Source: Octopus sinensis
Taxonomy: Eukaryota
DNA: 32,516 nucleotides
Direction of reading: 5' to 3'
NCBI RefSeq assembly: GCF_006345805.1
Contig: NW_021829649.1
Location: 1 to 32,516, forward strand
Position numbers and translations under genes: made by a program. The notes beneath the pieces are model-generated. The model did not search any database. It was not told where the DNA came from and was given only the letters and a program-made list of their open reading frames with translations. This document shows, piece after piece, positions 5,428 to 32,516 of the stretch; the stretch's first letter is position 1, and each line of letters starts with the position of its first letter.

Positions 5428-5820
5428 ATACACACACATATATATAATATATATATTCATTTTTTTTCTCTCCTTGTTTTTCTGTGTATCTTTCTGTCCA
5501 AGAGCGTAGGCTCGAAACGTAAAAGACTTTTCTATATTTCTCTTCCTGAGCGCTATATTAATAATTTGTTTGTTTGTACTCCACCTGCCTTAGTCTTTTG
5601 TTTATTTTCGTAAACTCTCTTTTATATATATATATATATATAATATATATATTCTTTTTTTTCTCTCCTTGTTTTTTTTCTGTGTATTTTCTATCCGAGC
5701 GCGTAGGCTCGAAACGTACAAGACTTTTCTTTCCTGAGCGCCATACTAATACATTTGTTTGTTTCTCCTCCACCTGCCTAGTCTTTTGTTTATTTGCGTA
5801 AACTTATATATATATATATC

Positions 5821-5851
<31 letters not shown>

Positions 5852-6021
5852 CATATTCTTTTTCTCTCTCGCTTGTTTTTTCTGTGTATCTTTCTGTCCG
5901 AGAGCGTAGGCTCGAAACGTAAAAGACTTTTCTATTTCTATTCCTGAGCGCTATACTAATACATTGTTTGTTTGTACTCCAGCTGCCTTCGTCTTTTGTT
6001 TATTTTCGTAAACCTTCCCGT
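4640..6021 (+). repeat. Six tandem copies of a ~200-270 bp (TA)n-containing element with a hammerhead-like motif
   Basis: gagcgtaggctcgaaacgta recurs with its GAAA at about 4744, 4981 (GAAC), 5247, 5514, 5711 and 5914. Spacing varies with (TA)n length. Confidence 0.9.
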
Positions 6022-6245
6022 TACATATAGATAGACAGATAGACAGACAGAGGGACACTGACAGACATAGACAGACAAATAGACAAGCAGACAGAGACAG
6101 ACAGACAGACACAAACAGACAGATGGACAGACGGACGGACGGACGGACAGTCACAGACTGGCAGATGATAAAAGAGAGAAAAGCAAATAGAATGACAGGC
6201 TGACAGTAGGGGACAGAGAGACAGACGAACAGACAGACGAAGGAA
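6021..6245. repeat. (AGAC)n/(GGAC)n cryptic microsatellite
   Basis: Seen directly. A similar tract lies at 4540-4640. Confidence 0.9.
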
Positions 6246-6276
6246 TGGCAGACGTTATCGGACGTGTGTTTCTTAC

Positions 6277-6471
6277 CTGAACAGTCCGGGAATGGCAAGT
6301 GGCTCTTTGGTGTCCATTCGTAGTCTTCGAAGCTACAGAAATATTTTTCAGCGGGTTGCAAGGCGAACGCGTACCCTTCCATACAGACGAGGGTACAGTG
6401 TACCCCAGCTTCGCTTCTGTGGCAGTCTCTCATGCCATTCCTGGGGGCAAGTGGTATGGTGCAGCGATGTT
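6277..6471 (-). CDS. SVEP1: Exon, sushi-like domain (EHRCTIPLAPRNGMRDCHRSEAGVHCTLVCMEGYAFALQPAEKYFCSFEDYEWTPKSHLPFPDCS)
   Basis: 195 bp, phase 1-1. Acceptor caacag|AA, donor G|gtaaga. Resembles the post-HYR sushi of SVEP1 (C-x-L-x-C-x-EGY ... KY-x-C ... W-x-P ... PDC). Confidence 0.92.
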
Positions 6472-6517
6472 CTGTTGTTACAGAAGATATCAGATAAAAA
6501 AAATCACAGAAAGCCCC

Positions 6518-6562
<45 letters not shown>

Positions 6563-6593
6563 ATTTCCCCAAGTAGATAAATTGATTATTCCC

Positions 6594-6646
<53 letters not shown>

Positions 6647-6658
6647 AAAGGTAAAAGA

Positions 6659-6992
6659 ACCCCCCTTCGTCATGAGTGACCATGGGTTTGCACCTAGAGA
6701 GTTACCCTCCTAGACACAAGTCTGGGCAAGGTTGTTTTTATGGAAGACCAGTAGTCGCCCATGCATACTGGCCTTCCCCTCTCCACGCCACCAGTGTTAT
6801 CCAAGGGAAAGACAAAGGTCGATACAGCTTGGCACCAGTGACGTCGCAACTCATTTCTACAGCTGAGTGAACTGGAGCAACGTTAAAGTAAAGTGCTTTG
6901 CTCAAGAACACAACACGCAGCCCGGACCGGGATTCGAGCTCACACACCTCACGATCGTAAGCTCGACGCTCTAACCACTGAGCCATGCGCCT

Positions 6993-7664: not shown

Positions 7665-8389
7665 ATATATCTCACGTCTGTTTCTTGATTTTGTTATGTG
7701 TTGATAGTAATTAGTAAGAAGTTAACGAGGCTTTATTGATTTCAGTAACAGAACATTGTTCCATTCTCAATTTATTGAGAACAGACAATATCTCACGTCT
7801 ATTTCTTGATTTTGTTATGTGTTGATAGTAATTAGTAAGAAGTTAACGAGGCTTTATTGATTTCAGTAACAGAACATTGTTCCATTCTCAATTTATTGAG
7901 AACAGACAATATCTCACGTCTATTTATTGATTTTGTTATGTGTTGATAGTAATTAGTAAGAAGTAGGTTTTATTGATTTCGGTAACAGAACAGTGTTCCA
8001 TTCTCAATTTATTGAGAACAGACAATATCTCACGTCTATTTCTTGATTTTGTTATGTGTTGATAGTAATTAGTAAGAAGTTAACAAGGTTTTATTGATTT
8101 CGGTAACAGAACAGTGTTCCATTCTCAATTTATTGAGAACAGACAATATCTCACGTCTATTTCTTGATTTTGTTATGTGTTGATAACAATTAGTAAGAGG
8201 TTAACAAGGTTTTATTGATTTCGGTAACAGAACATTGTTCCATTCTCAATTTATTGAGAACAGACAATATCTCACGTCTATTTCTTGATTTTGTTATGTG
8301 TTGATAGTAATTAGTAAGAAGTTAACAAGGTTTTATTGATTTCGGTAACAGAACAGTGTTCCATTCTCAATTTATTGAGAACAGACAAT
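7665..8389. repeat. Tandem repeat, 6 x 121 bp (one copy 116 bp)
   Basis: ctcacgtc recurs at 7671, 7792, 7913, 8029, 8150 and 8271. Confidence 0.95.
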
Positions 8390-8674: not shown

Positions 8675-9435
8675 ATATGTATGTATGTATGTATGTATTT
8701 ATGTATGTATGTATGTATGTATTTATGTATGTATGTATGTATGTATATATGTATTATGTATGTATGTATGTATGTATGTATTGTATGTATGTATGTATGT
8801 ATGTTGTATGTGTATTATGTATGTATGTATGTATGTATGTATGTATGTATTATGGTATGTATGTATGTATGTATTATGTATGTATGCATTAGGTATGTAT
8901 GTATGTATGTATGTATGTATGTATTATGTATGATGTATGTATGTATGTATGTAGTATGTATGTATTATGTATGTATGTATTATGTATTTGTATGTATGTA
9001 TGTATGTATGTATGTATGTATTATTATGTAGTATATGTATGTATTATGTATGTATGTATGTATGTTTTATGTATGTATGTATGTATGTATATATGTATGT
9101 ATGTATGTATGTATTATGTATGTATATGTATTTTATGTATGTATGTATGTATTATGTATGTATGTATGTATTTATGTATGTATGTATGTATGTATATATG
9201 TATTATGTATGTATGTAATGTATGTTATGGTATGTATGTATGTATGTATGTATGTATTAGTATGTATGTATGTATGTATTTTATGTATTATGTATGTATG
9301 TATGTATGTATGTATGTATGTATGTATGTATTTAGTATGTATGTATTATGTATGTATGTATGTATTGATGTATGTATGTATGTCTGTATGTTATGTATGT
9401 ATGTATGTATGTGTATATATGTATGTATGTATGTG

Positions 9436-9467
<32 letters not shown>

Positions 9468-9725
9468 TGTATGTATGTATGTATGTATGTATGTATGTAT
9501 GTATGTATATATGTATGTATAATATGTATGTATGTATGTATATAATGTAGTACATGTATGTATGTAGGTATGTATGTATTTATGTATGTATGTATGTATG
9601 TATGATATGTAGTAAGTATGTCTGTAGTATGTATGTATGTATGTAGTATTTATGTATGTATGTATTATGTATGTATGTATTATGTATTATGTATGTATGT
9701 ATGTATTATGTATGTATGTATTAGG

Positions 9726-9759
<34 letters not shown>

Positions 9760-10350
9760 TGTATTATTATGTATGTATGTATTAGTCTATATGGATTATG
9801 TATTTATGTATGTATGTATGTATGGTATGTATGTATGTATGTATGTATGTATGTATGTATGTATATATGTATTATGTATGTATGTGTATGTATGTAGGTA
9901 TTATGTATTATGATTATGTCTTTATGTATGTATGTATGTATGTATGTATGTATTTGTATGTTATGTATGTATGTATGTATGTATTATGTATGTATGTATA
10001 TATGTATATATGTATTATGTATGTATGTATTTATGTATGTATGTATGTATGTATATATGTATTATGTATGTATGTATGTATGTATGTATGTATGTATTAT
10101 GTATGTATGTATTATGTATGTATGTATGTATGTATGTATTATGTATGTATGTATTATGTATGTATGTATGTATTATGTATGTATGTATATATGTATGTAT
10201 TATGTATGTATGTATGTATGTATGTATGTATGTATGTATGTTTATGTATGTATGTATGTATGTATGTATGTATATATGCATGCATGTATATATGTATGTA
10301 TGCATGTATGTATGCATGTATATATGTATGTATGTATTATGTAAGCATGT
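8675..10350. repeat. About 1.7 kb degenerate (TATG)n tract
   Basis: Seen directly. It is the source of the MYVC/HTYI pseudo-ORFs. Confidence 0.97.
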
Positions 10351-10597
10351 ATGTCAGAGTCAGCACGCGGCTTTTCTTTAGCTGGGAAGAGTGAAAAGTC
10401 TTTTTCCGTTTGATGGCCATGACGAAGGCAAATGTATGGTGGACTGAAAGATAGACACGTTTCCCTTCAGACCAGCCATCATCAATATCTACAAGTTTCA
10501 TTTAAAGAGAGGAAGAGAGGAGTGCTGCTCTGAAGAGGATTTGTGAGAATGGCATGGGTGGAATGGGTAGATAGGTCTATTTTCAGGGCGTACCTAT

Positions 10598-11269: not shown

Positions 11270-11534
11270 CAACCTATACGTGTTTCAGTTGCACAAGATC
11301 TTCTTGATTGTGTCGAGAACGGCGAAAACTTTGTGAAAACGGTCATAACGGGTGATGAATCGCGGGTCGATGGTTATGTCCGCGATACAAAGGCTCGGTC
11401 TTCGCAGTGGAAGACCCCAACTTCTCTGAGACTGAAGCAATGTGAAGACCCTGCTGACCGTTTTCTTCGACTACAAGGGGATTGTTCATCGTAAGTATGC
11501 TCCATCTGGCCAGACAGTAAACAAGGGGTACTAC
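11270..11534 (+). pseudogene. Mariner (DD34D) transposase fragment containing the first catalytic Asp, interrupted by a SINE
   Basis: Translates as ENFVKTVITGDESRVDGYVRDTKARSSQWKTPTS, then after a frameshift NVKTLLTVFFDYKGIVHRKYAPSGQTVNKGYYL. Confidence 0.88.
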
Positions 11535-12588
11535 CTATTTCTTTACTACCCACAAGGGGCTAAACATAGAGGGGACAAACAAGGACAGACATAAGTATTA
11601 AGTCGATTCATCGACCCCAGTGCGTACTGGTACTTAATTTATCGACCCCGAAAGGATGAAAGGCAAGTGGACCTCGGCGGAATTTGAACTCACAACGTAA
11701 CGACGGCAGACGAAATACCTATTTCTTTATTACCCACAAGGGGCTAACACAGAGGGACAAACAAGGACAGACCATACGTATTAAGTCGATTACATCGACC
11801 CCAGTGCGTAACTGGTACTTAATTTATCGACCCCGAAAGGACGAAAGGCAAGTGGACCTCGGCGGAATTTGAACTCACAAAACGTAACTGCAGACGAAAT
11901 CGGCTAACGCATTTCGGCCCGCGTGCTAAACGTTTCTGCCCCCTCGCCGCCCAAGGGGTACTACCGTTGACGTTTTGCAGCGTTTGTGGGATGCTATCTG
12001 TCGGAAAAAGGCCACAGTTGCATGCTTTCCGGTGAGTGGCAATTGCACCCTGACAACGCACCCGCCCACTCGACGGCAGCGAGCTGGCAGAAACGTTAGC
12101 AAGCCGGGCGAGATGCTTAGCAGTATTTCGTCTGCCGTTGCGTTCTGAGTTCAAATTCCGCCGGGGTCGACTTGGCCTTTCATCCTTTCGGAGTCGATTA
12201 AATAAGTACAGGTTACGCACTGGGGTCGATGTAATCGATTTAATGTCCTTGTTTGTCCCCTCTATGTTTAGCCCCTTGTGGGCAATAAAGAAATAAAAAC
12301 ATAACGGCAGACGAAATACGGCTACGCATTTCGCCTGGCGTGCCAACGTTTCTTATTTCTTTATTGCCCACAAGGGGCTAAACATAGAAGGGACAAACAA
12401 GGACAGACGAACGGATAAAGTCGATTGTATCGACCCCAGTGCGTAACTGGTACTTAATTTATCGACCCCGAAAGGATGAAAGGCAAAGTCGACCTCGGCG
12501 GAATTTGAACTCAGAACGTAGCGTCAGACAAAATACGGCTACGCATTTCGCCTGGCGTGCTAACGTTTCTGACAGCTTTCCGCCTTAA
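11535..12588. mobile_element. SINE family A cluster (tandem minus 11535-11950; plus 12076-12298; minus 12303-12588)
   Basis: Repeated family A motifs on both strands. Confidence 0.88.
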
Positions 12589-13884: not shown

Positions 13885-14794
13885 GAGTGAGAGAGCAGTG
13901 CATGCCATCAAAGTGACCCTGGGGTAAAATATACGAAGCCCAGTATACCCACAATGACTACCCATCTGATAAGGATACACCAGGCACATGCATCACAACC
14001 ATATGTGCGTGACATGGTGAATCTCATATCAAGATAAACAGCGCATGACCTTGCAGGTGGGGCCCAATTAGAATTTTCTTCTGGTCGAGTAGCCCATTCC
14101 ACTCAAAAGGTCCCTGAATAAGGGTTGTTTAAGGATGTTGAACGAAACACCCATGTTTCCAAAGGTGAATTATCCAAACCCCAAAGAATCCCTCTCAACA
14201 CATGGCTATGATGCTCCCCCACTACTTCTGCTCGTGATCAGAGGAGAGAGCAGTGCATGCCATCAAAGTGACCCTGGGGTAAAATATACGAAGCCCAATA
14301 TACCCATCATGACTACCCATCTGATAAGGATACACCAGGCACATGCATCACAACCATATGTGCGTGACATGGTGAATCTCATATCAAGATTAACAGCGCA
14401 TAACCCTGCAGGTGGGGCCCAATTAGAATTTTCTTCAGGTTGAGTAGCCCATCCCGCTCAAACGGTCCCTGAATAAGGGTTGCTTAAGAATGTTGAAAGA
14501 ACCACCCATGTTTCCATAGGTGAATTATTCAAACCCCAAAGAATCCCTCTCAACACATGGCTATGATGCTCCCCCACTACTTCTGCTCGTGATCAGAGAT
14601 GCACATATCGTCAGCCACTAAGGGACATGGTCAACTGGTTACGGTCAAACAACTGACAAGCAAATCTGTGGTATTGAGCAGAATATTTGCTGTGGGCCAT
14701 CTTTTATACCAAGACAAAACAATGTACATGATAACACTTCCAATCAGTTAAGATCAGAAGTCACGAGAGCCATTGTCTGGTACTGCATCAGGGC

Positions 14795-16060: not shown

Positions 16061-16863
16061 ATTATTTGTGTATACACACACACACACACACATACGAGGG
16101 AGAGTCAGAAATTTTACCCACTCTTGTTTTTCCAATGTATTCACACAAAAACAGGGGACAAACAAGGAGGAATTACAACCGCGTTTCGTGGTCTGCTATC
16201 ACAACAGATCCTTTATAGGATCCAGTTAGCTCAAGACATCATCAGGAGGAACCACGTCCGGTTTCTGCCCCTACTCCTCTACCGTTTTGACGTGGTGGGG
16301 CACCCCCTTTCAGAGGTGTCTTCAGCTCTGGTGTTGGGTGCATGTCTTCTTTCTTCTTCTTTCTTCTGTTCCCTGGCCCCTTCGATGTATCGTCAGCGAG
16401 TGTCAGCCGGTGACTGACTGACTTGTCAAATTTTTCCCTTTAAATACCTGCCTGCTAGGCTCCAGCAGGCAGCCCCAGCAAGTTGTCACGTGATACTGTC
16501 TCACCATAACTGACTAGAGAAGGCGCATAGTTTTAGCCCGCGCTTTTTCCAAACGACCGTCACCTGTCAGTCAGCAAAGCTGATTCAGTCAGTTTGTCTC
16601 ACTTAATGATATTTCCCGCCGGCATGTTTATGACTTTCAAGCCATTTTCGGTCTTCCCGCTTCATCCATATACAGAAGCTGACAATGGATAAACAAGTAC
16701 ATTATTTTTTATATAGTTTCCTTCCTTTTCCATGCATTTGGTCCAGCGGTCTACAAGATTGCGTATTCCCTCCAAGAGGAAGGTTTTCGCTTGGTCGTGC
16801 AACCATTTATACCCCTGCACATCTTCATCCGTAGGAAATCGACATTGTAGACCATCTTTGAGC

Positions 16864-17314
16864 GGTCCAAAGATATGATAGTCGTTAAGGGGCGACATCT
16901 GGGCTGTAAGCAAGGTGTTCCAACACACCAAAACCCAATTGGTTAATGGTTTTCGGTCCAAAGATATGATAGTCGGAAGGGGTGACATCTGGACTGTAAG
17001 CAAAGTGTTCCAACACACCAAAACCCAATTGGTTAATGGTTTTCGGTCCAAAGATATGATAGTCGTTAAGGGGCGACATCTGGGCTGTAAGCAAGGTGTT
17101 CCAACACACCAAAACCCAATTGGTCAATGGTTTTCGGTCCAAAGATATGATAGTCGGAAGGGGCGACATCTGGGCTGTAAGCAAAGTGTTCCAACACACC
17201 AAAACCCAATTGGTTAATGGTTTTCGGTCCAAAGATATGATAGTCGGAAGGGGCGACATCTGGGCTGTAAGCAAAGTGTTCCAGCACACCAAAACCCAAT
17301 TGGTTAATGGTTTT
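16864..17314. repeat. Five tandem 90/91-bp units
   Basis: ggtccaaagatatg recurs at 16864, 16955, 17045, 17136 and 17226. Confidence 0.95.
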
Positions 17315-24499: not shown

Positions 24500-25560
24500 T
24501 GGTAGGAATAATGATGGTGGTGGTAGTGGTGGTGATGGTGGTGGTTTTGGTGGTGGTGTGGTGGTGGTGTTTTGGTGGTTTTGGTGGTGGTTTTGGTGGT
24601 GGTGGTGGTGGTTTTGGTGGTGGTGGTGTTGTTGTTGGTGGGGGTGGTTTTGGTGGCGGTGATTTTGGTAGTTTTTGTGGTGGTGGTGGTGGTGGAGGTG
24701 GCGGCGGTGGTGGTGGCGGCGGCGATGGTGGTGGTGGTGGTGGTGGCGGTTTTGGTGAAGATGGTGGTGGTGGTTTTGGTGGTGGTGGTGGTGGTGGTGT
24801 TTGTGGCGGCGGCGATGGTGTTGGTGGCGGCGGCGATGGTGGTGGTGGTGGTGGTGGCGGTTTTGGTGGAGATGGTGGTGGTTTTGGTGGTGGTGGTGGT
24901 GGTGGCGGCGGCGATGGTGGTGGTGATGGTGGCGGTTTTGGTGGTGGTTTTGGTGGTGGTGGTGGCGGTGGTGGTGGTTTTGGTGGTGGTGGTGGTGGTG
25001 GTGGTAGTGGTGGTAGTGGTGGTGGTGGTGATGGTGGTGGTGGTAGTGGTGGTGATGGTGGCGGTTTTGGTGGTGGTTTTGGTGGTGGTGGTGGTGGTGG
25101 TGGTAGTGGTGGTAGTGGTGGTGGTGGTGATGTGGTGATGGTGGTGGTGATGGTGGCGGTTTTGGTGGTGGTTTTGGTGGTGGTGGTGTGTGGTGGTGGC
25201 GGTGGTGGTGTGGGTTTGGTGTGGTGTATGGTGTAGTGGTGGTGGTGGTGATGGTGGTGGTGGTGGTGGTGGTAGTGGTGGTGATGGTGGCGGTTTTGGT
25301 GGTGGTTTTGGTGGTGGTGGTGGTGGTGGTGGTGGTTTTGGTGGTGATGGTGGTGGTTTTGGTGGCGGTGATTTTGGTAGTTTTTGTGGTGGTGGTGGTG
25401 GAGGTGGCGGCGGTGGTGGTGGCGGCTGCGGCTGTGGTGGTGGTGGTGGTGGTGGTGGTGGTGATGGTGGTGGCGGCGGTGATGGTGACAGTGATAGTTG
25501 TGGCAACAGTGGAGATGGTAGTGTTAGTGGTGGTGTTGGTGGTGTGTTGTTGTGATGGTG
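24500..25560. repeat. About 1.1 kb degenerate (GGT)n tract with internal block duplications
   Basis: Seen directly. The block near 24644-24720 recurs near 25355-25427. Confidence 0.96.
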
Positions 25561-26091
25561 GTATTGGTAATCGTAGTGATACTGTTGTTATTATTGTTCT
25601 CACCTTTGACCCAACAGATATGTCAACAGAACTGTTCCAACCACGACCACCTCTCCTTTCTATGGGTACATATATCGAATCCCACATCATTTAATGTGAC
25701 CGTTTGTTTCTTCATGGTAAAGTGTAATTTTAAACTATGGCTGTTATTTTTAGCAAATCAAGCGATCACAGAGACTCTTACATTGCTTTTGGATCAAGAC
25801 TGACCTAGGGCTAAACAACAAGGAAGGACACATTCAATAATGTAGTCCTAGATACACTATTTCTGAGTGAAAGGCAGGATGGTCATAACTGGAACGCCTT
25901 TGATTGCAGGTCTGCTCAGGGTGGGTGGGGTGAGGGTGGAACTAAACATTAGTAACAACATTACAAAAATACAAAAAGTAAAAGCGACAAACACAACAAA
26001 AATTGCTACTACAACCACTACTACTATTACAACTACTACTAGTACTACTACTACTACGTTTGCGGTGGCTGTATAGTTTTGGTGGTAGTAC

Positions 26092-26331
26092 CTAGTACGT
26101 GTATCTGTATCGTACAGTTGTTAACATTTTTCGAGTTGTCGTAGGCTCGGTAAATAACATCTGTGATCCCTTGTTGGAAGTAACTGTTGGGTTCGTGGGT
26201 CTTGGTGATTTGCAGTTTACCATTGGAGTTGTCGCTGAAAAGGGGCTCATCCCAGGTGACAATCACTTCTGGTTTATTGCTGACAACAGTGACCGAACGT
26301 GGGCAGCGGTCAACACGTGGTGGCTGAGTGT
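26092..26331 (-). CDS. SVEP1: Exon, HYR domain 2 (DTQPPRVDRCPRSV...WDEPLFSDNS...YRAYDNSKNVNNCTIQIHVL)
   Basis: 240 bp, phase 1-1. Acceptor ctttcag|AC, donor G|gtacta (weak consensus). HYR motifs are present. Confidence 0.9.
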
Positions 26332-27550: not shown

Positions 27551-28000
27551 TCTCTTACTCTTTACTCTTTTACTCTTTTACTTGTTTCAGTCATTTGACT
27601 GCGGCCATGCTGGAGCACCGCCTTTAGTCGAGGAGCAAATCGACCCCAGGACTTATTCTTTGTAAGCCTAGTACTTATTCTATCGGTCTCTTTTACTTGT
27701 TTCAGTCATTTGACTGTGGCCATGCTGGAGCACTGCCTTTAGTCGAGCAAATCGACCCCAGGACTTATTCTTTGTAAGCCTAGTACTTATTCTATCGGTC
27801 TCTTTTACTCGTTTCAGTCATTTGACTGCGGCCATGCTGGAGCACCGCCTTTAGTCGAGCAAATCGACCCCCAGGACTTATTCTTTGTAAGCCCAGTACT
27901 TATTCTATCGGTCTCTTTTTGCCGAACCGCTAAGTGACAGGGAGGTAAAAAAAACAGCATCGGTTGTTCAAGCGATGCTGGAGGGACAAACACAGCAGAC
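27548..28000 (-). mobile_element. SINE family B 3' part with the ~113-bp terminal module triplicated
   Basis: cagtcatttgactg..gccatgctggagcac..cctttagtcgag occurs three times. Confidence 0.9.
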
Positions 28001-28112: not shown

Positions 28113-28361
28113 CTTTAACTGTGACATTGAACTTGCATTCCTGTCGGTTTTTGTTAGCATCCTGTGCTATGTATGTGACCGGTGTCACACCGATGGGGAA
28201 ACGGGCCGGTGGCTGGACAGCTGGGATCGTTGTGATGGACGGGACCAGGCCGGAGTTGTCATAGGCCAGTGGAAGAACCCACGTGACATTGGTCATGTGA
28301 CTGTTCTCGTCTGCTTCGACGTCGATGTCGTCTGGACAGAAGATTTGCGGCGGACTTGTAT
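28113..28361 (-). CDS. SVEP1: Exon, HYR domain 1 (DTSPPQIFCPDDIDVEA...FPIGVTPVTYIAQDANKNRQECKFNVTVK)
   Basis: 249 bp, phase 1-1. Acceptor cactag|AT, donor G|gtaagc. HYR motifs D-x-x-PP-x-I-x-CP, V-x-W, DNSG, FPIG, C-x-F-x-V-x-V. Confidence 0.93.
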
Positions 28362-29563: not shown

Positions 29564-29764
29564 CTATGCAACGGCTGGCCTCTATCTCGATGGGTGACCA
29601 CACCCCGTCCGGGGTGCACTGCTTGCTCGGGGAGCCGATCAGTGTGAAGCCGTGGTTGCAGGAAAGCTTGCACGTCGTCCCAAATGGCACTTCGTCCCCT
29701 CCCGTGCACACGTCTGGGCTGACGGTGCCAAACTGAAGACCGCTCAGGTGTTGACAGGTGATCT
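29564..29764 (-). CDS. SVEP1: Exon, sushi/CCP domain (EITCQHLSGLQFGTVSPDVCTGGDEVPFGTTCKLSCNHGFTLIGSPSKQCTPDGVWSPIEIEASRCI)
   Basis: 201 bp, phase 1-1. Acceptor tttacag|AG, donor G|gtaagt. Sushi Cys/Trp pattern. Confidence 0.92.
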
Positions 29765-30314
29765 CTGTAAAGGTGGGAAGTCGACAGTGGAGAGGTTAAA
29801 GAAGGGGCGCAATTAGGGGAGAGGAAGGGGAACGGGGGAGGCGAAAGGAGGAGAGGGACACACGCCTGGGCTGACGGTGCCAAACTGAAGACCGCTCAGG
29901 TGTTGACAGGTGATCTCTGTAAAGGTGGGAAACCGACAGTGGAGAGGTTAAAGAAAGGGCGCATGTAGGGGAGAGGAAGGGGAACGAGGGAGACGAGAGG
30001 AGGAGAGGGACACACGTCTGGGCTGACGGTGCCAAACTGAAGACCGTTCAGGTGTTGACAGGTGATCTCTGTAAAGGTGGGAAACCGACAGCGGAGAGGT
30101 TAAAGAAGGGGCGCATGTAGGGGAGAGGAAGGGGAACGAGGGAGACGAGAGGAGGTGAGGGACACACGCCTGGGCTGACGGTGCCAAACTGAAGACCGTT
30201 CAGGTGTTGACAGGTGATCTCTGTAAAGGTGGGAAACCGACAGTGGAGAGGTTAAAGAAAGGGCGCATGTAGGGGAGTGGAAGGGGAACGAGGGAGACGA
30301 GAGGAGGAGAGGGA
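29707..30314. repeat. Four tandem 152-bp copies spanning a splice acceptor and the first 58 nt of an exon
   Basis: ggtgatctctgtaaaggtggg recurs every 152 bp. Confidence 0.96.
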
Positions 30315-30406
30315 GATGAATGAGTGAAGGAGCATGAGCAGAGGAAGGGGTAGAATCGGAGGAGGAGGAGGGAGGGACAAAGTGGAATGGTGTGTGGTTA
30401 GGGTGA

Positions 30407-30515
30407 GCTGGCAGAGACGTTAGCACGCCGGGCGAAATGCGTAGCCGTATTTCGTCTGCCGCTACGTTCTGAGTTCAAATTCCGCCGAGGTCGACTTTGC
30501 CTTTCATCCTTTCGT
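30407..30515 (+). mobile_element. SINE family A 5' fragment
   Basis: gagctggcagagacgttagcacgccgggcgaaatgcgtagcc...gagttcaaattccgccgagg. Confidence 0.85.
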
Positions 30516-30941
30516 CCTTATCTCTTAACAACTGCTTTCCTTGCTGGTATGGGTTGGACTGTTTGACAGGGTCCAACAAGTCACAGAGCCGTCATCTTTG
30601 CTCTGGTTTCTAACAACTGGATGCTGCCCTTCTTAACACCCACCACTTTACAGTGTGCACTGGGGGCTGTTTTTATGTGGCACAAGCACCAGTGGGGTCT
30701 CTGAGTAGTCTACAAGATTAGAAAAGAACAGCAAAAAGGAAAATGCATCCCCCCACACCTCAAATGAATGGATGTACATTTGTGAGAGGGGAGTGGCCTC
30801 ATGCTTGGCATTAAGATTAGAGTATGATAAAGGGACAAGCATTTGTATCGTGGCAGAGAAGATACATGAAGGGCTTTCCTGCATTATGTGAGGGTGGGTG
30901 AGAGTAGGAGAGAGAGGGCGAGAGAGAGAGAGGGCGAGAGA

Positions 30942-30973
<32 letters not shown>

Positions 30974-31062
30974 TGAGGATGGGAGGGATGTGGTGCCAAG
31001 GTGTTACCTGAAGGTAGAGAAAAGTGAGCGTTCTTACGAGAATATAGGAATTAGGAAAAGTG

Positions 31063-31400
31063 GACTAGGCGATTAGGAATGGTGGATTAGGGGATTAGGA
31101 GGGGTGGATGAGGGGATTAGGAAGGGTGGATTAGGGGATTAGGAAGGGTGGATGAGGGGATTAGGAAGGGTGGATTAGGAGAATGGGAAGGGTGGATAAG
31201 GGGATTAGGAAGGGTGGATTAGGGGATTAGGAAGGGTGGATTATGGGATTAGGAAGGGTGGATTAGGGGATTAGGAAGGGTGGATTAGGGGATTAGGAAG
31301 GGTGGATGAGGGGATTAGGAAGGGTGGATTAGGAGAATGGGAAGGGTGGATGAGGGGATTAGGAAGGGTGGATGAGGGGATTAGGAATGGTGGATTAGGA
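31063..31400. repeat. G-rich 22-bp minisatellite (GGGGATTAGGAAGGGTGGATTA), about 15 copies
   Basis: Seen directly in the sequence. Confidence 0.93.
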
Positions 31401-31678
31401 GAATGAATAGTTGAAATGGGAGAATATCAAATTGTTGATGGAAATAGCTTTGATGTGGACAAAAGTAATGAAAATAGAGGAAAAGAAGATGAGAGAGAAG
31501 AGGAAGAATTTGATGGAGTTGATTCGACATTACAAGGAAACAAATGAAGGCGGTAAAATGATGAAATATAACTGTTGAGATGTGGCTGAAAATCTTTGGA
31601 AATTGAGTTGGGGGGGGGGGGACTTGAGAAAGATCAAAATGAGCAGAAAACAGATAAAATGGAAATTGCCAAACTTAC

Positions 31679-31858
31679 CTCGACACCTGGTGGTTATACC
31701 GGACCAATAGGCAATAGCAAGACAAGTTCGTCTTCGGGACCCAATCAGTTTGTATCCTGTGTCGCAAGTGAAACGACAAACCGTAGAGAAAGTGAAGTCC
31801 CCTCGACTACAGATGCGATTTCCGTTCTTTGGGGTTGGCAGATGAGGACAGACTTTCA
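31679..31858 (-). CDS. SVEP1: Exon, sushi/CCP domain (VKVCPHLPTPKNGNRICSRGDFTFSTVCRFTCDTGYKLIGSRRRTCLAIAYWSGITTRCR)
   Basis: 180 bp, phase 1-1. Acceptor ttcctccag|TG, donor G|gtaagt. Four-Cys sushi pattern with C-x-x-GY-x-L-x-G and W. Confidence 0.93.
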
Positions 31859-31914: not shown

Positions 31915-32516
31915 GTGCCCAGACTTATTCTTTTTAAGCCTGGTACTTTTTGTATCAGTCTCTTATGCCGAACCACTAAGTGACGGGGACGTAAACGCAC
32001 CAACATCGGTTTCAAGCAATGGCGGGGATACAAACACAGACACACAAACATATACATACATATGTACATATAACGGGCTTCTTTCAGTTTCCATCAACCA
32101 AATCCACTCACAAGGCTTTGGTCAGTTTGGGACTACAGTAAAAGACACTTACTTGAGATGCCATGCTGTGGGATTGAACCTAAAACCATGTGGTTGAGAA
32201 GCAAACTTCTTAACCACACAGCATGCAGGTACCTATCACTATGCCTGAACATAGTTCCATATCTGTGCCTATAGGCATCCTTGCATCTCTTTTTTACTCT
32301 CTTTTACTCTTTTATTTGTTTCAGTCATTTGACTGTGGCCATGCTGGAGCACCACCTTTAGTCGAGCAAATCAACCCCAGGACTTATTCTTTGTAAACCT
32401 AGTAACTTATTCTATCGGTCTCTTTTTTGCCGAACCGCTAAGTGACGGGGACGTAAATGCACCAACATCGGTTGTCAAGCAATGGTGGGGATACAAACAC
32501 AGATACACAAACATAT
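31915..32516 (-). mobile_element. Two SINE family B copies (about 31915-32225 diverged; 32287-end partial)
   Basis: Family B motifs on the minus strand. Confidence 0.82.

What the first reader, a model, noticed from the sequence alone, without database searches (positions are those of the whole stretch)
29707..30314. Splice acceptor and exon start quadruplicated by a 152-bp tandem repeat, giving three upstream poison acceptors
Seen: each unit holds 94 nt of intron (pyrimidine tract, a TTTAAC branch-point candidate, tttacag) plus the first 58 nt of the sushi exon. Near-identical AG acceptors therefore lie at 29765, 29917, 30069 and 30221. Only the most downstream one keeps the frame. Using 29917 hits TAA inside the repeat; using 30069 or 30221 reads ...PPLQRSPVNT* into the next unit. 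Inference: either exon definition strictly selects the proximal site, or copy number tunes the share of NMD or truncated secreted isoforms. This would be a VNTR acting on splicing.
Basis: partly seen in the sequence, partly recalled or inferred. Interest (0 to 1): 0.7.

Follow-up and report, generated by a model that had tools for sequence, protein, structure and literature searches.

The report
Tandem-duplicated splice acceptor ("mirage" minisatellite)
A 152-bp stretch covering the end of an intron and the first 58 bases of a sushi-domain exon is repeated four times in an octopod-like SVEP1-type gene; this kind of repeat is already known from lancelets, where RT-PCR and mRNA data found splicing undisturbed, so it is a neat but probably ordinary by-product of a repeat-rich genome.

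Summary
Window 29707-30314 holds four head-to-tail 152-bp units. Each unit is 94 nt of intron end plus 58 nt of exon start, on the minus strand. The acceptor AGs are at 29765, 29917, 30069 and 30221.

The host gene is a live, constrained SVEP1/polydom-like gene (CCP-CCP-HYR-HYR; dN/dS about 0.07 against Argonauta hians). Argonauta and a second relative each have one acceptor at the same exon position. The array is therefore lineage-specific and young.

The four acceptors are equal in strength and predicted accessibility. The upstream exon stubs have no usable donor. Only the authentic acceptor is followed by a whole exon and a GTAAGT donor 201 nt downstream.

The structure matches the "mirage" minisatellites of amphioxus, including a 150-160-bp acceptor-side case with normal splicing. 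It mirrors donor-side minisatellites in human F7, IFI6, CBS, LMNB2 and PDGF.

Most likely it is a near-neutral tandem duplication with silent or weakly leaky decoy acceptors. A copy-number "rheostat" for NMD is not excluded, but nothing here supports it. No RNA or population data were reachable.

The parts
29707..30314 (-). 152-bp x 4 tandem array ('mirage'-type minisatellite). Units are u1 29707-29858 (authentic, contiguous with the rest of the exon), u2 29859-30010, u3 30011-30162 and u4 30163-30314.
   Evidence: TRF. Register and pairwise differences: u1 differs from u2-u4 at 9-11 of 152 positions, and u2-u4 differ from each other at 2-5. The unit occurs nowhere else in the window.
29564..29764 (-). 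Authentic sushi/CCP exon B (201 nt, phase 1-1, six cysteines). Acceptor AG has its G at 29765. Donor is TAG|GTAAGT, with GT at 29563-29562.
   Evidence: Pfam Sushi. Same exon boundary in Argonauta and in L002. Approximate donor PWM score 7.07.
29859..29916 (-). Pseudo-exon stub of u2 (58 nt) behind decoy acceptor 29917. Reading from it stops at the TAA inside u1.
   Evidence: No donor-like GT.
30011..30068 (-). Pseudo-exon stub of u3 behind decoy acceptor 30069. Reads ...PPLQRSPVNT* (TGA in the next unit).
   Evidence: The best GT in the whole array is GAC|GTGTGT at 30015, score 0.21 against 7.07 for the real donor.
30163..30220 (-). Pseudo-exon stub of u4 behind decoy acceptor 30221. Reads ...PPLQRSPVNT*.
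29809..29817 (-). Approximate position of a CTAAT branch-point-like motif (A at -49) found only in the authentic unit. u2-u4 have CTACAT at this place. The same two substitutions create the TAA that stops the frame read from acceptor 29917.
   Evidence: This is a sequence observation only; any function is inferred.
31679..31858 (-). Upstream sushi/CCP exon A (180 nt, phase 1-1). Donor is GAG|GTAAGT, with the G of GT at 31678.
   Evidence: 93% amino-acid identity to Argonauta.
29765..31678 (-). Intron between exons A and B (1914 nt if the authentic acceptor is used). It is CT-rich on the transcribed strand and also holds a 22-bp x 15.9 minisatellite (31050-31399) and a (GA)n-type array (30900-30977).
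28113..28361 (-). Downstream HYR exon C (249 nt, phase 1-1), intact.
26092..26331 (-). Downstream HYR exon D (about 240 nt; the 3' end is inferred from TAG|GTACTA and the frame), intact.

Best explanation
This is a lineage-specific minisatellite of the 'mirage' type. A tandem duplication, later expanded to four copies, had a unit that straddled the 3' splice site of a CCP exon in an SVEP1/polydom-like gene of an octopod-like cephalopod.

Origin (inferred): slippage or unequal exchange in an intron end that is CT-rich and repeat-prone in octopods generally. An older first duplication was followed by recent homogenising expansion of the internal units.

Consequence (inferred from the anatomy and from published experiments on the same architecture): the three upstream copies are complete but context-poor decoy acceptors. 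Each is followed by a 58-nt exon stub with no 5' splice site and then by more CU-rich intron. The spliceosome therefore pairs the upstream donor (31678) overwhelmingly with the exon-adjacent acceptor (29765). That is the only acceptor followed by a full 201-nt exon and a consensus GTAAGT donor, and so the only one supported by exon definition. It may also carry an extra branch-point motif.

A small share of transcripts may use a decoy. Those transcripts carry a premature stop more than 50 nt before later exon junctions and would be expected to be removed by NMD. The net effect on the gene is near-neutral.
For: Shown:
- The array and its register.
- Acceptors identical from -16 to +12, with equal pyrimidine content (0.75) and an equal TTAAC at -32.
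- Equal predicted accessibility, 0.51-0.54.
- No donor-like GT in any stub: best 0.21 against 7.07 for the real donor.
- All decoy frames stop.
- The orthologous acceptor is single-copy at the same exon position in Argonauta hians and in a second relative.
- The Argonauta gene model reads RCR-E-ITCQHL across the junction.
- Exons A-D are intact, with dN/dS about 0.07 over 285 codons.
- In Argonauta a 940-bp CT-rich minisatellite ends 2 nt before the same acceptor AG.
- The boundary unit u1 is the outlier while u2-u4 are homogenised. The same pattern is described for the amphioxus BflGb6 mirage (PMC3087553).

Published:
- The BflGb6 mirage is intron 3' end plus exon 5' part, with a 150-160-bp unit, 3 versus 6 copies in two haplotypes, and regular splicing by RT-PCR.
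- Lancelet Adh, TnC and PGBD5 repeats duplicate splice sites without aberrant mRNAs (PMC3902484).
- In a minigene with duplicated 3' splice sites and a short, donor-less upstream stub, the full exon was preferred 25:1, or 6:1 when coupled to Pol II transcription (PMC1450099).
- In human F7, with 5-9 identical donors from a boundary-spanning VNTR, only the exon-adjacent donor is used (PMC1557585).
Against: - There is no RNA evidence from the source species. The source assembly and its transcripts are not in any collection I could reach.
- The four acceptors are equal in sequence. The decoys are transcribed first, which favours them kinetically; Pol II coupling raised use of the upstream site about five-fold in PMC1450099.
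- Early duplicated-acceptor experiments gave contradictory answers, as summarised in PMC1557585.
- An exon starting at the nearest decoy would be 353 nt long, which is still within the range where exon definition can work. Leakage could therefore be more than trivial.
- Copy number in the assembly could not be checked against reads. The amphioxus authors noted that their mirage was mis-assembled in the draft genome.
Confidence: 0.75

Rival explanations
1. Splicing rheostat. The array is a polymorphic VNTR, and each extra decoy acceptor diverts a further share of pre-mRNA into PTC-containing transcripts or a truncated secreted VWA-CCP isoform. Copy number would then set the output of the gene, and selection could act on it.
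For: Four equal-strength acceptors. The decoys are transcribed first, and co-transcriptional splicing raises use of upstream sites (PMC1450099). Some boundary-spanning donor minisatellites do use one or two pseudo-sites constitutively (IFI6 6-16 and CBS, cited in PMC1557585). Mirage arrays vary in copy number between haplotypes.
Against: There are no polymorphism or RNA data. The array is absent from both relatives, so it is not a conserved regulatory device. The stubs lack donors and the remainder of the exon. The published acceptor-side mirages splice normally. The window is full of similar arrays in plainly non-functional sequence.
Confidence: 0.12
2. Assembly artefact. The true locus has one unit, or a different number, and the extra copies come from mis-assembly or from haplotypes laid in tandem.
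For: Tandem repeats are a classic source of copy-number error. The BflGb6 mirage was 'aberrantly assembled' in the amphioxus draft genome.
Against: The units have a perfectly regular 152-bp period with no indels and 13 structured substitutions, some shared between units. That is not what read errors or haplotype stacking look like. The same contig carries uninterrupted microsatellites of 1.0-1.7 kb, which points to long reads that would span a 608-bp array.
Confidence: 0.06
3. Gene in decay. The duplication has already broken splicing, and the downstream exons are a young pseudogene.
For: If the first-transcribed acceptor were used, every transcript would be truncated.
Against: Exons A-D are intact, with all cysteines and strong Pfam matches. 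dN/dS is about 0.07, although that figure averages over a much longer time than the age of the array. The units have had time to diverge by 6-7% without any disabling change in the 690 nt of exons B-D. This last point is a rough inference, not a test.
Confidence: 0.05

Closest known systems
[quoted passage not shown] 2002, cited in PMC3087553; PMC3087553; PMC3902484)
   Same: Head-to-tail repeats whose unit spans an intron/exon boundary and reiterates the splice signal. BflGb6 is the same side (intron 3' end plus exon 5' part), almost the same unit length (150-160 bp against 152) and a similar copy number (3-6 against 4). In both, the internal units are homogenised and the boundary unit is excluded from that.
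   Different: The phylum differs (cephalochordate against cephalopod mollusc), as does the host gene. For amphioxus there is RT-PCR evidence of normal splicing and evidence of haplotype or somatic length variation. Neither could be tested here.
Human minisatellites whose first monomer spans an exon/intron boundary: F7 IVS7 37-bp VNTR, IFI6 (6-16), CBS IVS13, LMNB2, PDGF (PMC1557585)
   Same: A tandem array multiplies an authentic splice site into a row of identical pseudo-sites. The exon-adjacent site is used exclusively, or together with one or two neighbours.
   Different: Those arrays are on the donor side, where the authentic site is transcribed first. Here it is the acceptor, and the authentic site is transcribed last. 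A simple 5'-to-3' 'first site wins' rule would therefore pick the wrong site.
Engineered duplicated 3' splice-site minigenes (wt14 substrate, PMC1450099)
   Same: One upstream exon, two competing 3' splice sites, and an upstream pseudo-exon that is short and lacks a 5' splice site.
   Different: That substrate is artificial, mammalian and has two sites rather than four. The quantitative ratios (1/25 and 1/6) may not transfer to a cephalopod.
Intron gain or alternative splicing from tandem duplication (Rogers model; Gao and Lynch 2009; Zhuo et al. 2007, known to me only as citations in PMC3087553)
   Same: An internal tandem duplication carries splice signals and lengthens or creates intronic sequence.
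   Different: No new intron or new exon is created here. The extra copies simply extend an existing intron.

Membership tests
'Mirage' minisatellite (tandem duplication of an intron/exon boundary) | Head-to-tail tandem repeats of minisatellite unit size | tested here: met
   152 bp x 4.0, 95% matches, no indels.
'Mirage' minisatellite (tandem duplication of an intron/exon boundary) | The unit spans an exon/intron boundary, so the splice signal is reiterated | tested here: met
   94 nt of intron ending in tttacag plus 58 nt of exon in every unit. The boundary is confirmed as the orthologous one in two relatives.
'Mirage' minisatellite (tandem duplication of an intron/exon boundary) | One terminal unit is the authentic gene section, continuous with the rest of the exon | tested here: met
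   u1 (29707-29858) runs on into 29706..29564, giving a complete six-cysteine CCP domain.
'Mirage' minisatellite (tandem duplication of an intron/exon boundary) | Concerted evolution of the internal units, with the boundary unit excluded | tested here: met
   u2-u4 differ at 2-5 positions. u1 differs from them at 9-11.
'Mirage' minisatellite (tandem duplication of an intron/exon boundary) | Regular splicing is maintained, with no aberrant mRNA | not testable with these tools
   No transcripts of the source species are in the collections. The only support is indirect: gene integrity and dN/dS.
'Mirage' minisatellite (tandem duplication of an intron/exon boundary) | Length instability or polymorphism between haplotypes | not testable with these tools
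   Only one haplotype is available. No other individual was found.
Conserved poison-exon or regulated unproductive splicing element | The PTC-introducing splice element is conserved across related species | tested here: not met
   Argonauta hians and the L002 species each have a single acceptor and no repeat of the exon start.
Conserved poison-exon or regulated unproductive splicing element | Observed use of the poison site in RNA | not testable with these tools
   No RNA data.
NAGNAG or short-range tandem acceptors | Competing AGs a few nucleotides apart that share one branch point and pyrimidine tract | tested here: not met
   The AGs are 152 nt apart, and each has its own branch-point candidate and pyrimidine tract.
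Host gene: SVEP1/polydom-like | VWA, then CCP repeats, then HYR repeats at the N-terminal end; EGF, pentraxin and a long CCP run further on | tested here: inconclusive
   CCP-CCP-HYR-HYR in consecutive phase 1-1 exons. A VWA gene fragment lies upstream and HYR downstream in the Argonauta locus. The EGF and pentraxin parts lie outside the window and were not examined.

The most novel reading that the evidence does not exclude
The array is a length-polymorphic VNTR in the source population. Its decoy acceptors are transcribed before the real one and capture a copy-number-dependent share of transcripts. Copy number would then act as a heritable dial on the output of an SVEP1-like extracellular matrix gene. 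This would be an acceptor-side counterpart of the human F7 intron 7 VNTR, and a natural test of how a spliceosome chooses among identical 3' splice sites when the correct one comes last.
Probability: 0.1. Interest if true: 0.6.

Novelty: new member of a known kind. Interest (0 to 1): 0.3.

Why it matters
It is a clean natural example of four equal 3' splice sites in a row where only the last-transcribed one is correct. That makes it a natural test for models of acceptor choice: exon definition, 5'-to-3' scanning, or kinetic 'first come, first served'.

In the literature I could search, such boundary-spanning repeats were reported only for lancelets on the acceptor side and for a handful of human genes on the donor side. 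Finding one in a cephalopod suggests they are a general by-product of minisatellite-rich genomes.

There is also a practical side. Repeats like this mislead gene predictors and spliced aligners, which can report false junctions between repeated sequences (PMC10632439, listed; I saw only its abstract). If the array is simply silent, as is most likely, it is of modest interest.

Tried and rejected
1. Same-species or close-relative DNA or RNA:
- The protein search returned only three relatives. The best was Argonauta hians at 86% identity.
- Exact look-ups of window ORFs across the exon and the array found nothing.
- An exact 27-mer scan of the metagenome collection found nothing.
- Copy-number variation and splice-junction use therefore could not be tested. 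I ran no further search on the repeat ORF, because the first search showed that the species is not represented.

2. A usable donor behind the decoy stubs, which would make them mini-exons. None was found. By hand, the frame-compatible micro-exon options (9 nt, 24 nt, 53 nt) either hit a stop or need very poor donors.

3. RNA structure that might hide the decoys. Predicted accessibility is the same for all four acceptors.

4. Homology of the unit to anything else in the window. There is none.

5. Literature:
- Two searches were unproductive or swamped by unrelated uses of 'duplicated 3'.
- The MIR137 VNTR paper turned out to be a VNTR near splice sites, not one that carries them.
- Canestro 2002 and Zhuo 2007 are not held and are cited only second-hand.

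6. The 90-bp array at 16863-17314 looked from memory like a mariner transposase fragment, but Pfam gave no hit.

Full report
**The observation**

Tandem Repeats Finder reports one array at 29707-30314 with period 152, 4.0 copies, 95% matches, no indels and score 1104. In register, the four units vary at 13 of 152 columns. The gene is on the minus strand. Each unit consists of 94 nt of CT-rich intron ending in tttacag, followed by 58 nt that equal the start of an exon.

That exon continues beyond the array only from the lowest-coordinate unit. It runs 29764..29564 (201 nt) and ends TAG|GTAAGT. The Gs of the four AGs are at 29765, 29917, 30069 and 30221.

With the phase-1 entry set by the upstream exon (31858..31679, donor G at 31678), the outcomes are as follows:
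- 29765 gives an intact domain, ITCQHLSGLQFGTVSPDVCTGGDEVPFGTTCKLSCNHGFTLIGSPSKQCTPDGVWSPIEIEASRCI.
- 29917 stops at TAA.
- 30069 and 30221 read ...PPLQRSPVNT*.

**The gene**

The two exons are Pfam Sushi domains (3.7e-16). Two further conserved phase 1-1 exons lie downstream on the same strand, at 28361..28113 and about 26331..26092. Both are HYR domains (2.5e-37).

The best database relative is a partial gene model from the octopod Argonauta hians, at 86% identity. It reads ...TTRCR-E-ITCQHL... across the same junction. In its locus a VWA-domain fragment lies upstream and an HYR fragment downstream. VWA / CCP / HYR is the N-terminal layout of SVEP1/polydom, but I did not see the rest of the gene.

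Against Argonauta, over 285 codons, dN/dS is about 0.07 with synonymous sites saturated. The gene is constrained. The source species is not a close relative of Argonauta. Its own assembly and transcripts are not in any collection I could query.

**Comparative anatomy**

Two relatives were available: Argonauta (L001) and a second, more distant one from an unnamed ENA assembly (L002). Both have a single copy of the exon start, and both have the acceptor at the same exon position, cag|AAATCAC. The array is therefore lineage-specific.

In Argonauta, a CT-rich minisatellite of about 940 bp (60-bp period, 13.7 copies) ends 2 nt before the acceptor AG. The same intron in the window also holds a 22-bp x 15.9 array that is CT-rich on the transcribed strand. 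The end of this intron is thus repeat-prone in octopods. In the window's lineage, one unit happened to reach 58 nt into the exon.

Unit u1, the authentic one, differs from u2-u4 at 9-11 positions, while u2-u4 differ from each other at 2-5. This suggests an older first duplication followed by later expansion or homogenisation of the internal units.

The window as a whole is loaded with arrays of similar unit size: 121x6, 90x5, 112x3.1, 355x2, 185x1.9 and 203x1.9. Together they cover about 11% of it. One array touching an exon edge is therefore not statistically remarkable.

**What distinguishes the acceptors**

Very little distinguishes the sites themselves:
- The sequence from -16 to +12 is identical in all four.
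- Pyrimidine content from -23 to -4 is 0.75 in all four.
- A TTAAC branch-point candidate sits at -32 in all four.
- Predicted unpaired probability of the acceptor region is 0.51-0.54 for all four.

The differences are in context:
- Only the authentic acceptor is followed by a complete exon and a consensus donor 201 nt away.
- The stubs are followed by CU-rich intron.
- No GT in the array resembles a donor. On an approximate donor weight matrix written from memory, the best scores 0.21 against 7.07 for the real donor.
- Only u1 carries a CTAAT motif, at -49. Whether that matters is unknown.

**Mechanism**

I infer that exon definition selects 29765 and that the decoys are silent or weakly leaky. 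Leaked transcripts would carry premature stops upstream of later junctions and would be expected to be NMD substrates.

This rests on published work, not on data from this species:
- A minigene with duplicated 3' splice sites, in which the upstream pseudo-exon is short and has no 5' splice site, spliced to the full downstream exon 25:1. The ratio was 6:1 when splicing was coupled to Pol II transcription (PMC1450099).
- In human F7, 5-9 identical donors created by a boundary-spanning VNTR are ignored in favour of the exon-adjacent one (PMC1557585).
- In IFI6 and CBS, one or two neighbouring pseudo-sites are also used.

Some points weigh against a fully silent array:
- The decoys are transcribed first.
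- The classical duplicated-acceptor experiments disagreed with each other.
- The nearest decoy would define an exon of only 353 nt.

**Comparison with what is known**

The structure meets every testable defining feature of a 'mirage' minisatellite. The amphioxus BflGb6 case is strikingly similar. It combines the intron 3' end with the exon 5' part, has a 150-160-bp unit, shows 3 versus 6 copies in two haplotypes, has 81-100% unit identity, and excludes its boundary units from homogenisation.

Two features could not be tested here: normal splicing and length polymorphism. The array is not a conserved poison-splicing element, since it is absent in relatives. It is not a NAGNAG-type tandem acceptor either.

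In the searchable literature I found mirages reported only for lancelets. I therefore file this as a new member of a known kind.

**Verdict**

The feature is real and was accurately described. It is most probably a near-neutral tandem duplication whose extra acceptors are decoys. The idea of a VNTR that tunes NMD remains possible (about 0.1) but has no evidence behind it. The decisive data are long-read cDNA and copy-number genotyping in the source species. The two-SNP signatures of the stubs make the junctions assignable.

Noticed in passing
L001 17535-18474 (Argonauta hians): A CT-rich minisatellite of about 940 bp (60-bp period x 13.7) ends 2 nt before the orthologous acceptor AG (18476-77). 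In effect it forms the polypyrimidine tract. It abuts the exon edge but does not cross it.
   Followed up: partly
window 16863-17314: A 90-bp x 5.0 tandem array (181-bp higher-order period). Its minus-strand reading repeats '...YSPDV(A/T)PSDYHIFGPKTINQLGFGVLEH...'. From memory this resembles the C-terminal motif of mariner/Tc1 transposases, but Pfam gave no hit.
   Followed up: partly
window 7667-8389; 13889-14598; 11532-11880; 5623-6013: Further long-period tandem arrays (121x6.0 at 96%; 355x2.0; 185x1.9; 203x1.9). Together with the focal array, such repeats cover about 11% of the window, which suggests a genome-wide tendency to form minisatellites.
   Followed up: no
window 27573-27919 and about 32330-32440: A SINE-like unit (...TCAGTCATTTGACTGCGGCCATGCTGGAGCACCGCC...) occurs as a 112-bp x 3.1 tandem array, and again in the opposite orientation near the window end. 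From memory it resembles the abundant octopus SINE. This was not tested.
   Followed up: no
window 8676-10354 and 24515-25562: Very long uninterrupted microsatellites, (TATG)x432 and (TGG)x350. They imply a long-read assembly. The second gives spurious ORFs of 340-400 aa on both strands.
   Followed up: no
window 5951-6673 (minus strand): This ORF contains a CCP-like stretch (HRCTIPLAPRNGMRDC...FCSFEDYEWTPKSHLPFPDC). It may be a further exon of the same gene about 20 kb downstream. The Pfam Sushi match is only E=0.054, below the cutoff.
   Followed up: partly
window 31050-31399: A 22-bp x 15.9 minisatellite (ATTAGGAAGGGTGGATTAGGGG on the plus strand, CT-rich on the transcribed strand), inside the same intron as the focal array.
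   Followed up: no
window 29713/29743, 29865/29895, 30017/30047, 30169/30199: The two variable exon-stub positions (+52 and +22) give each of the four units a unique haplotype: A/G, G/G, A/A and G/A in the order +52/+22. RNA junction reads of at least 52 nt can therefore be assigned to one acceptor.
   Followed up: yes
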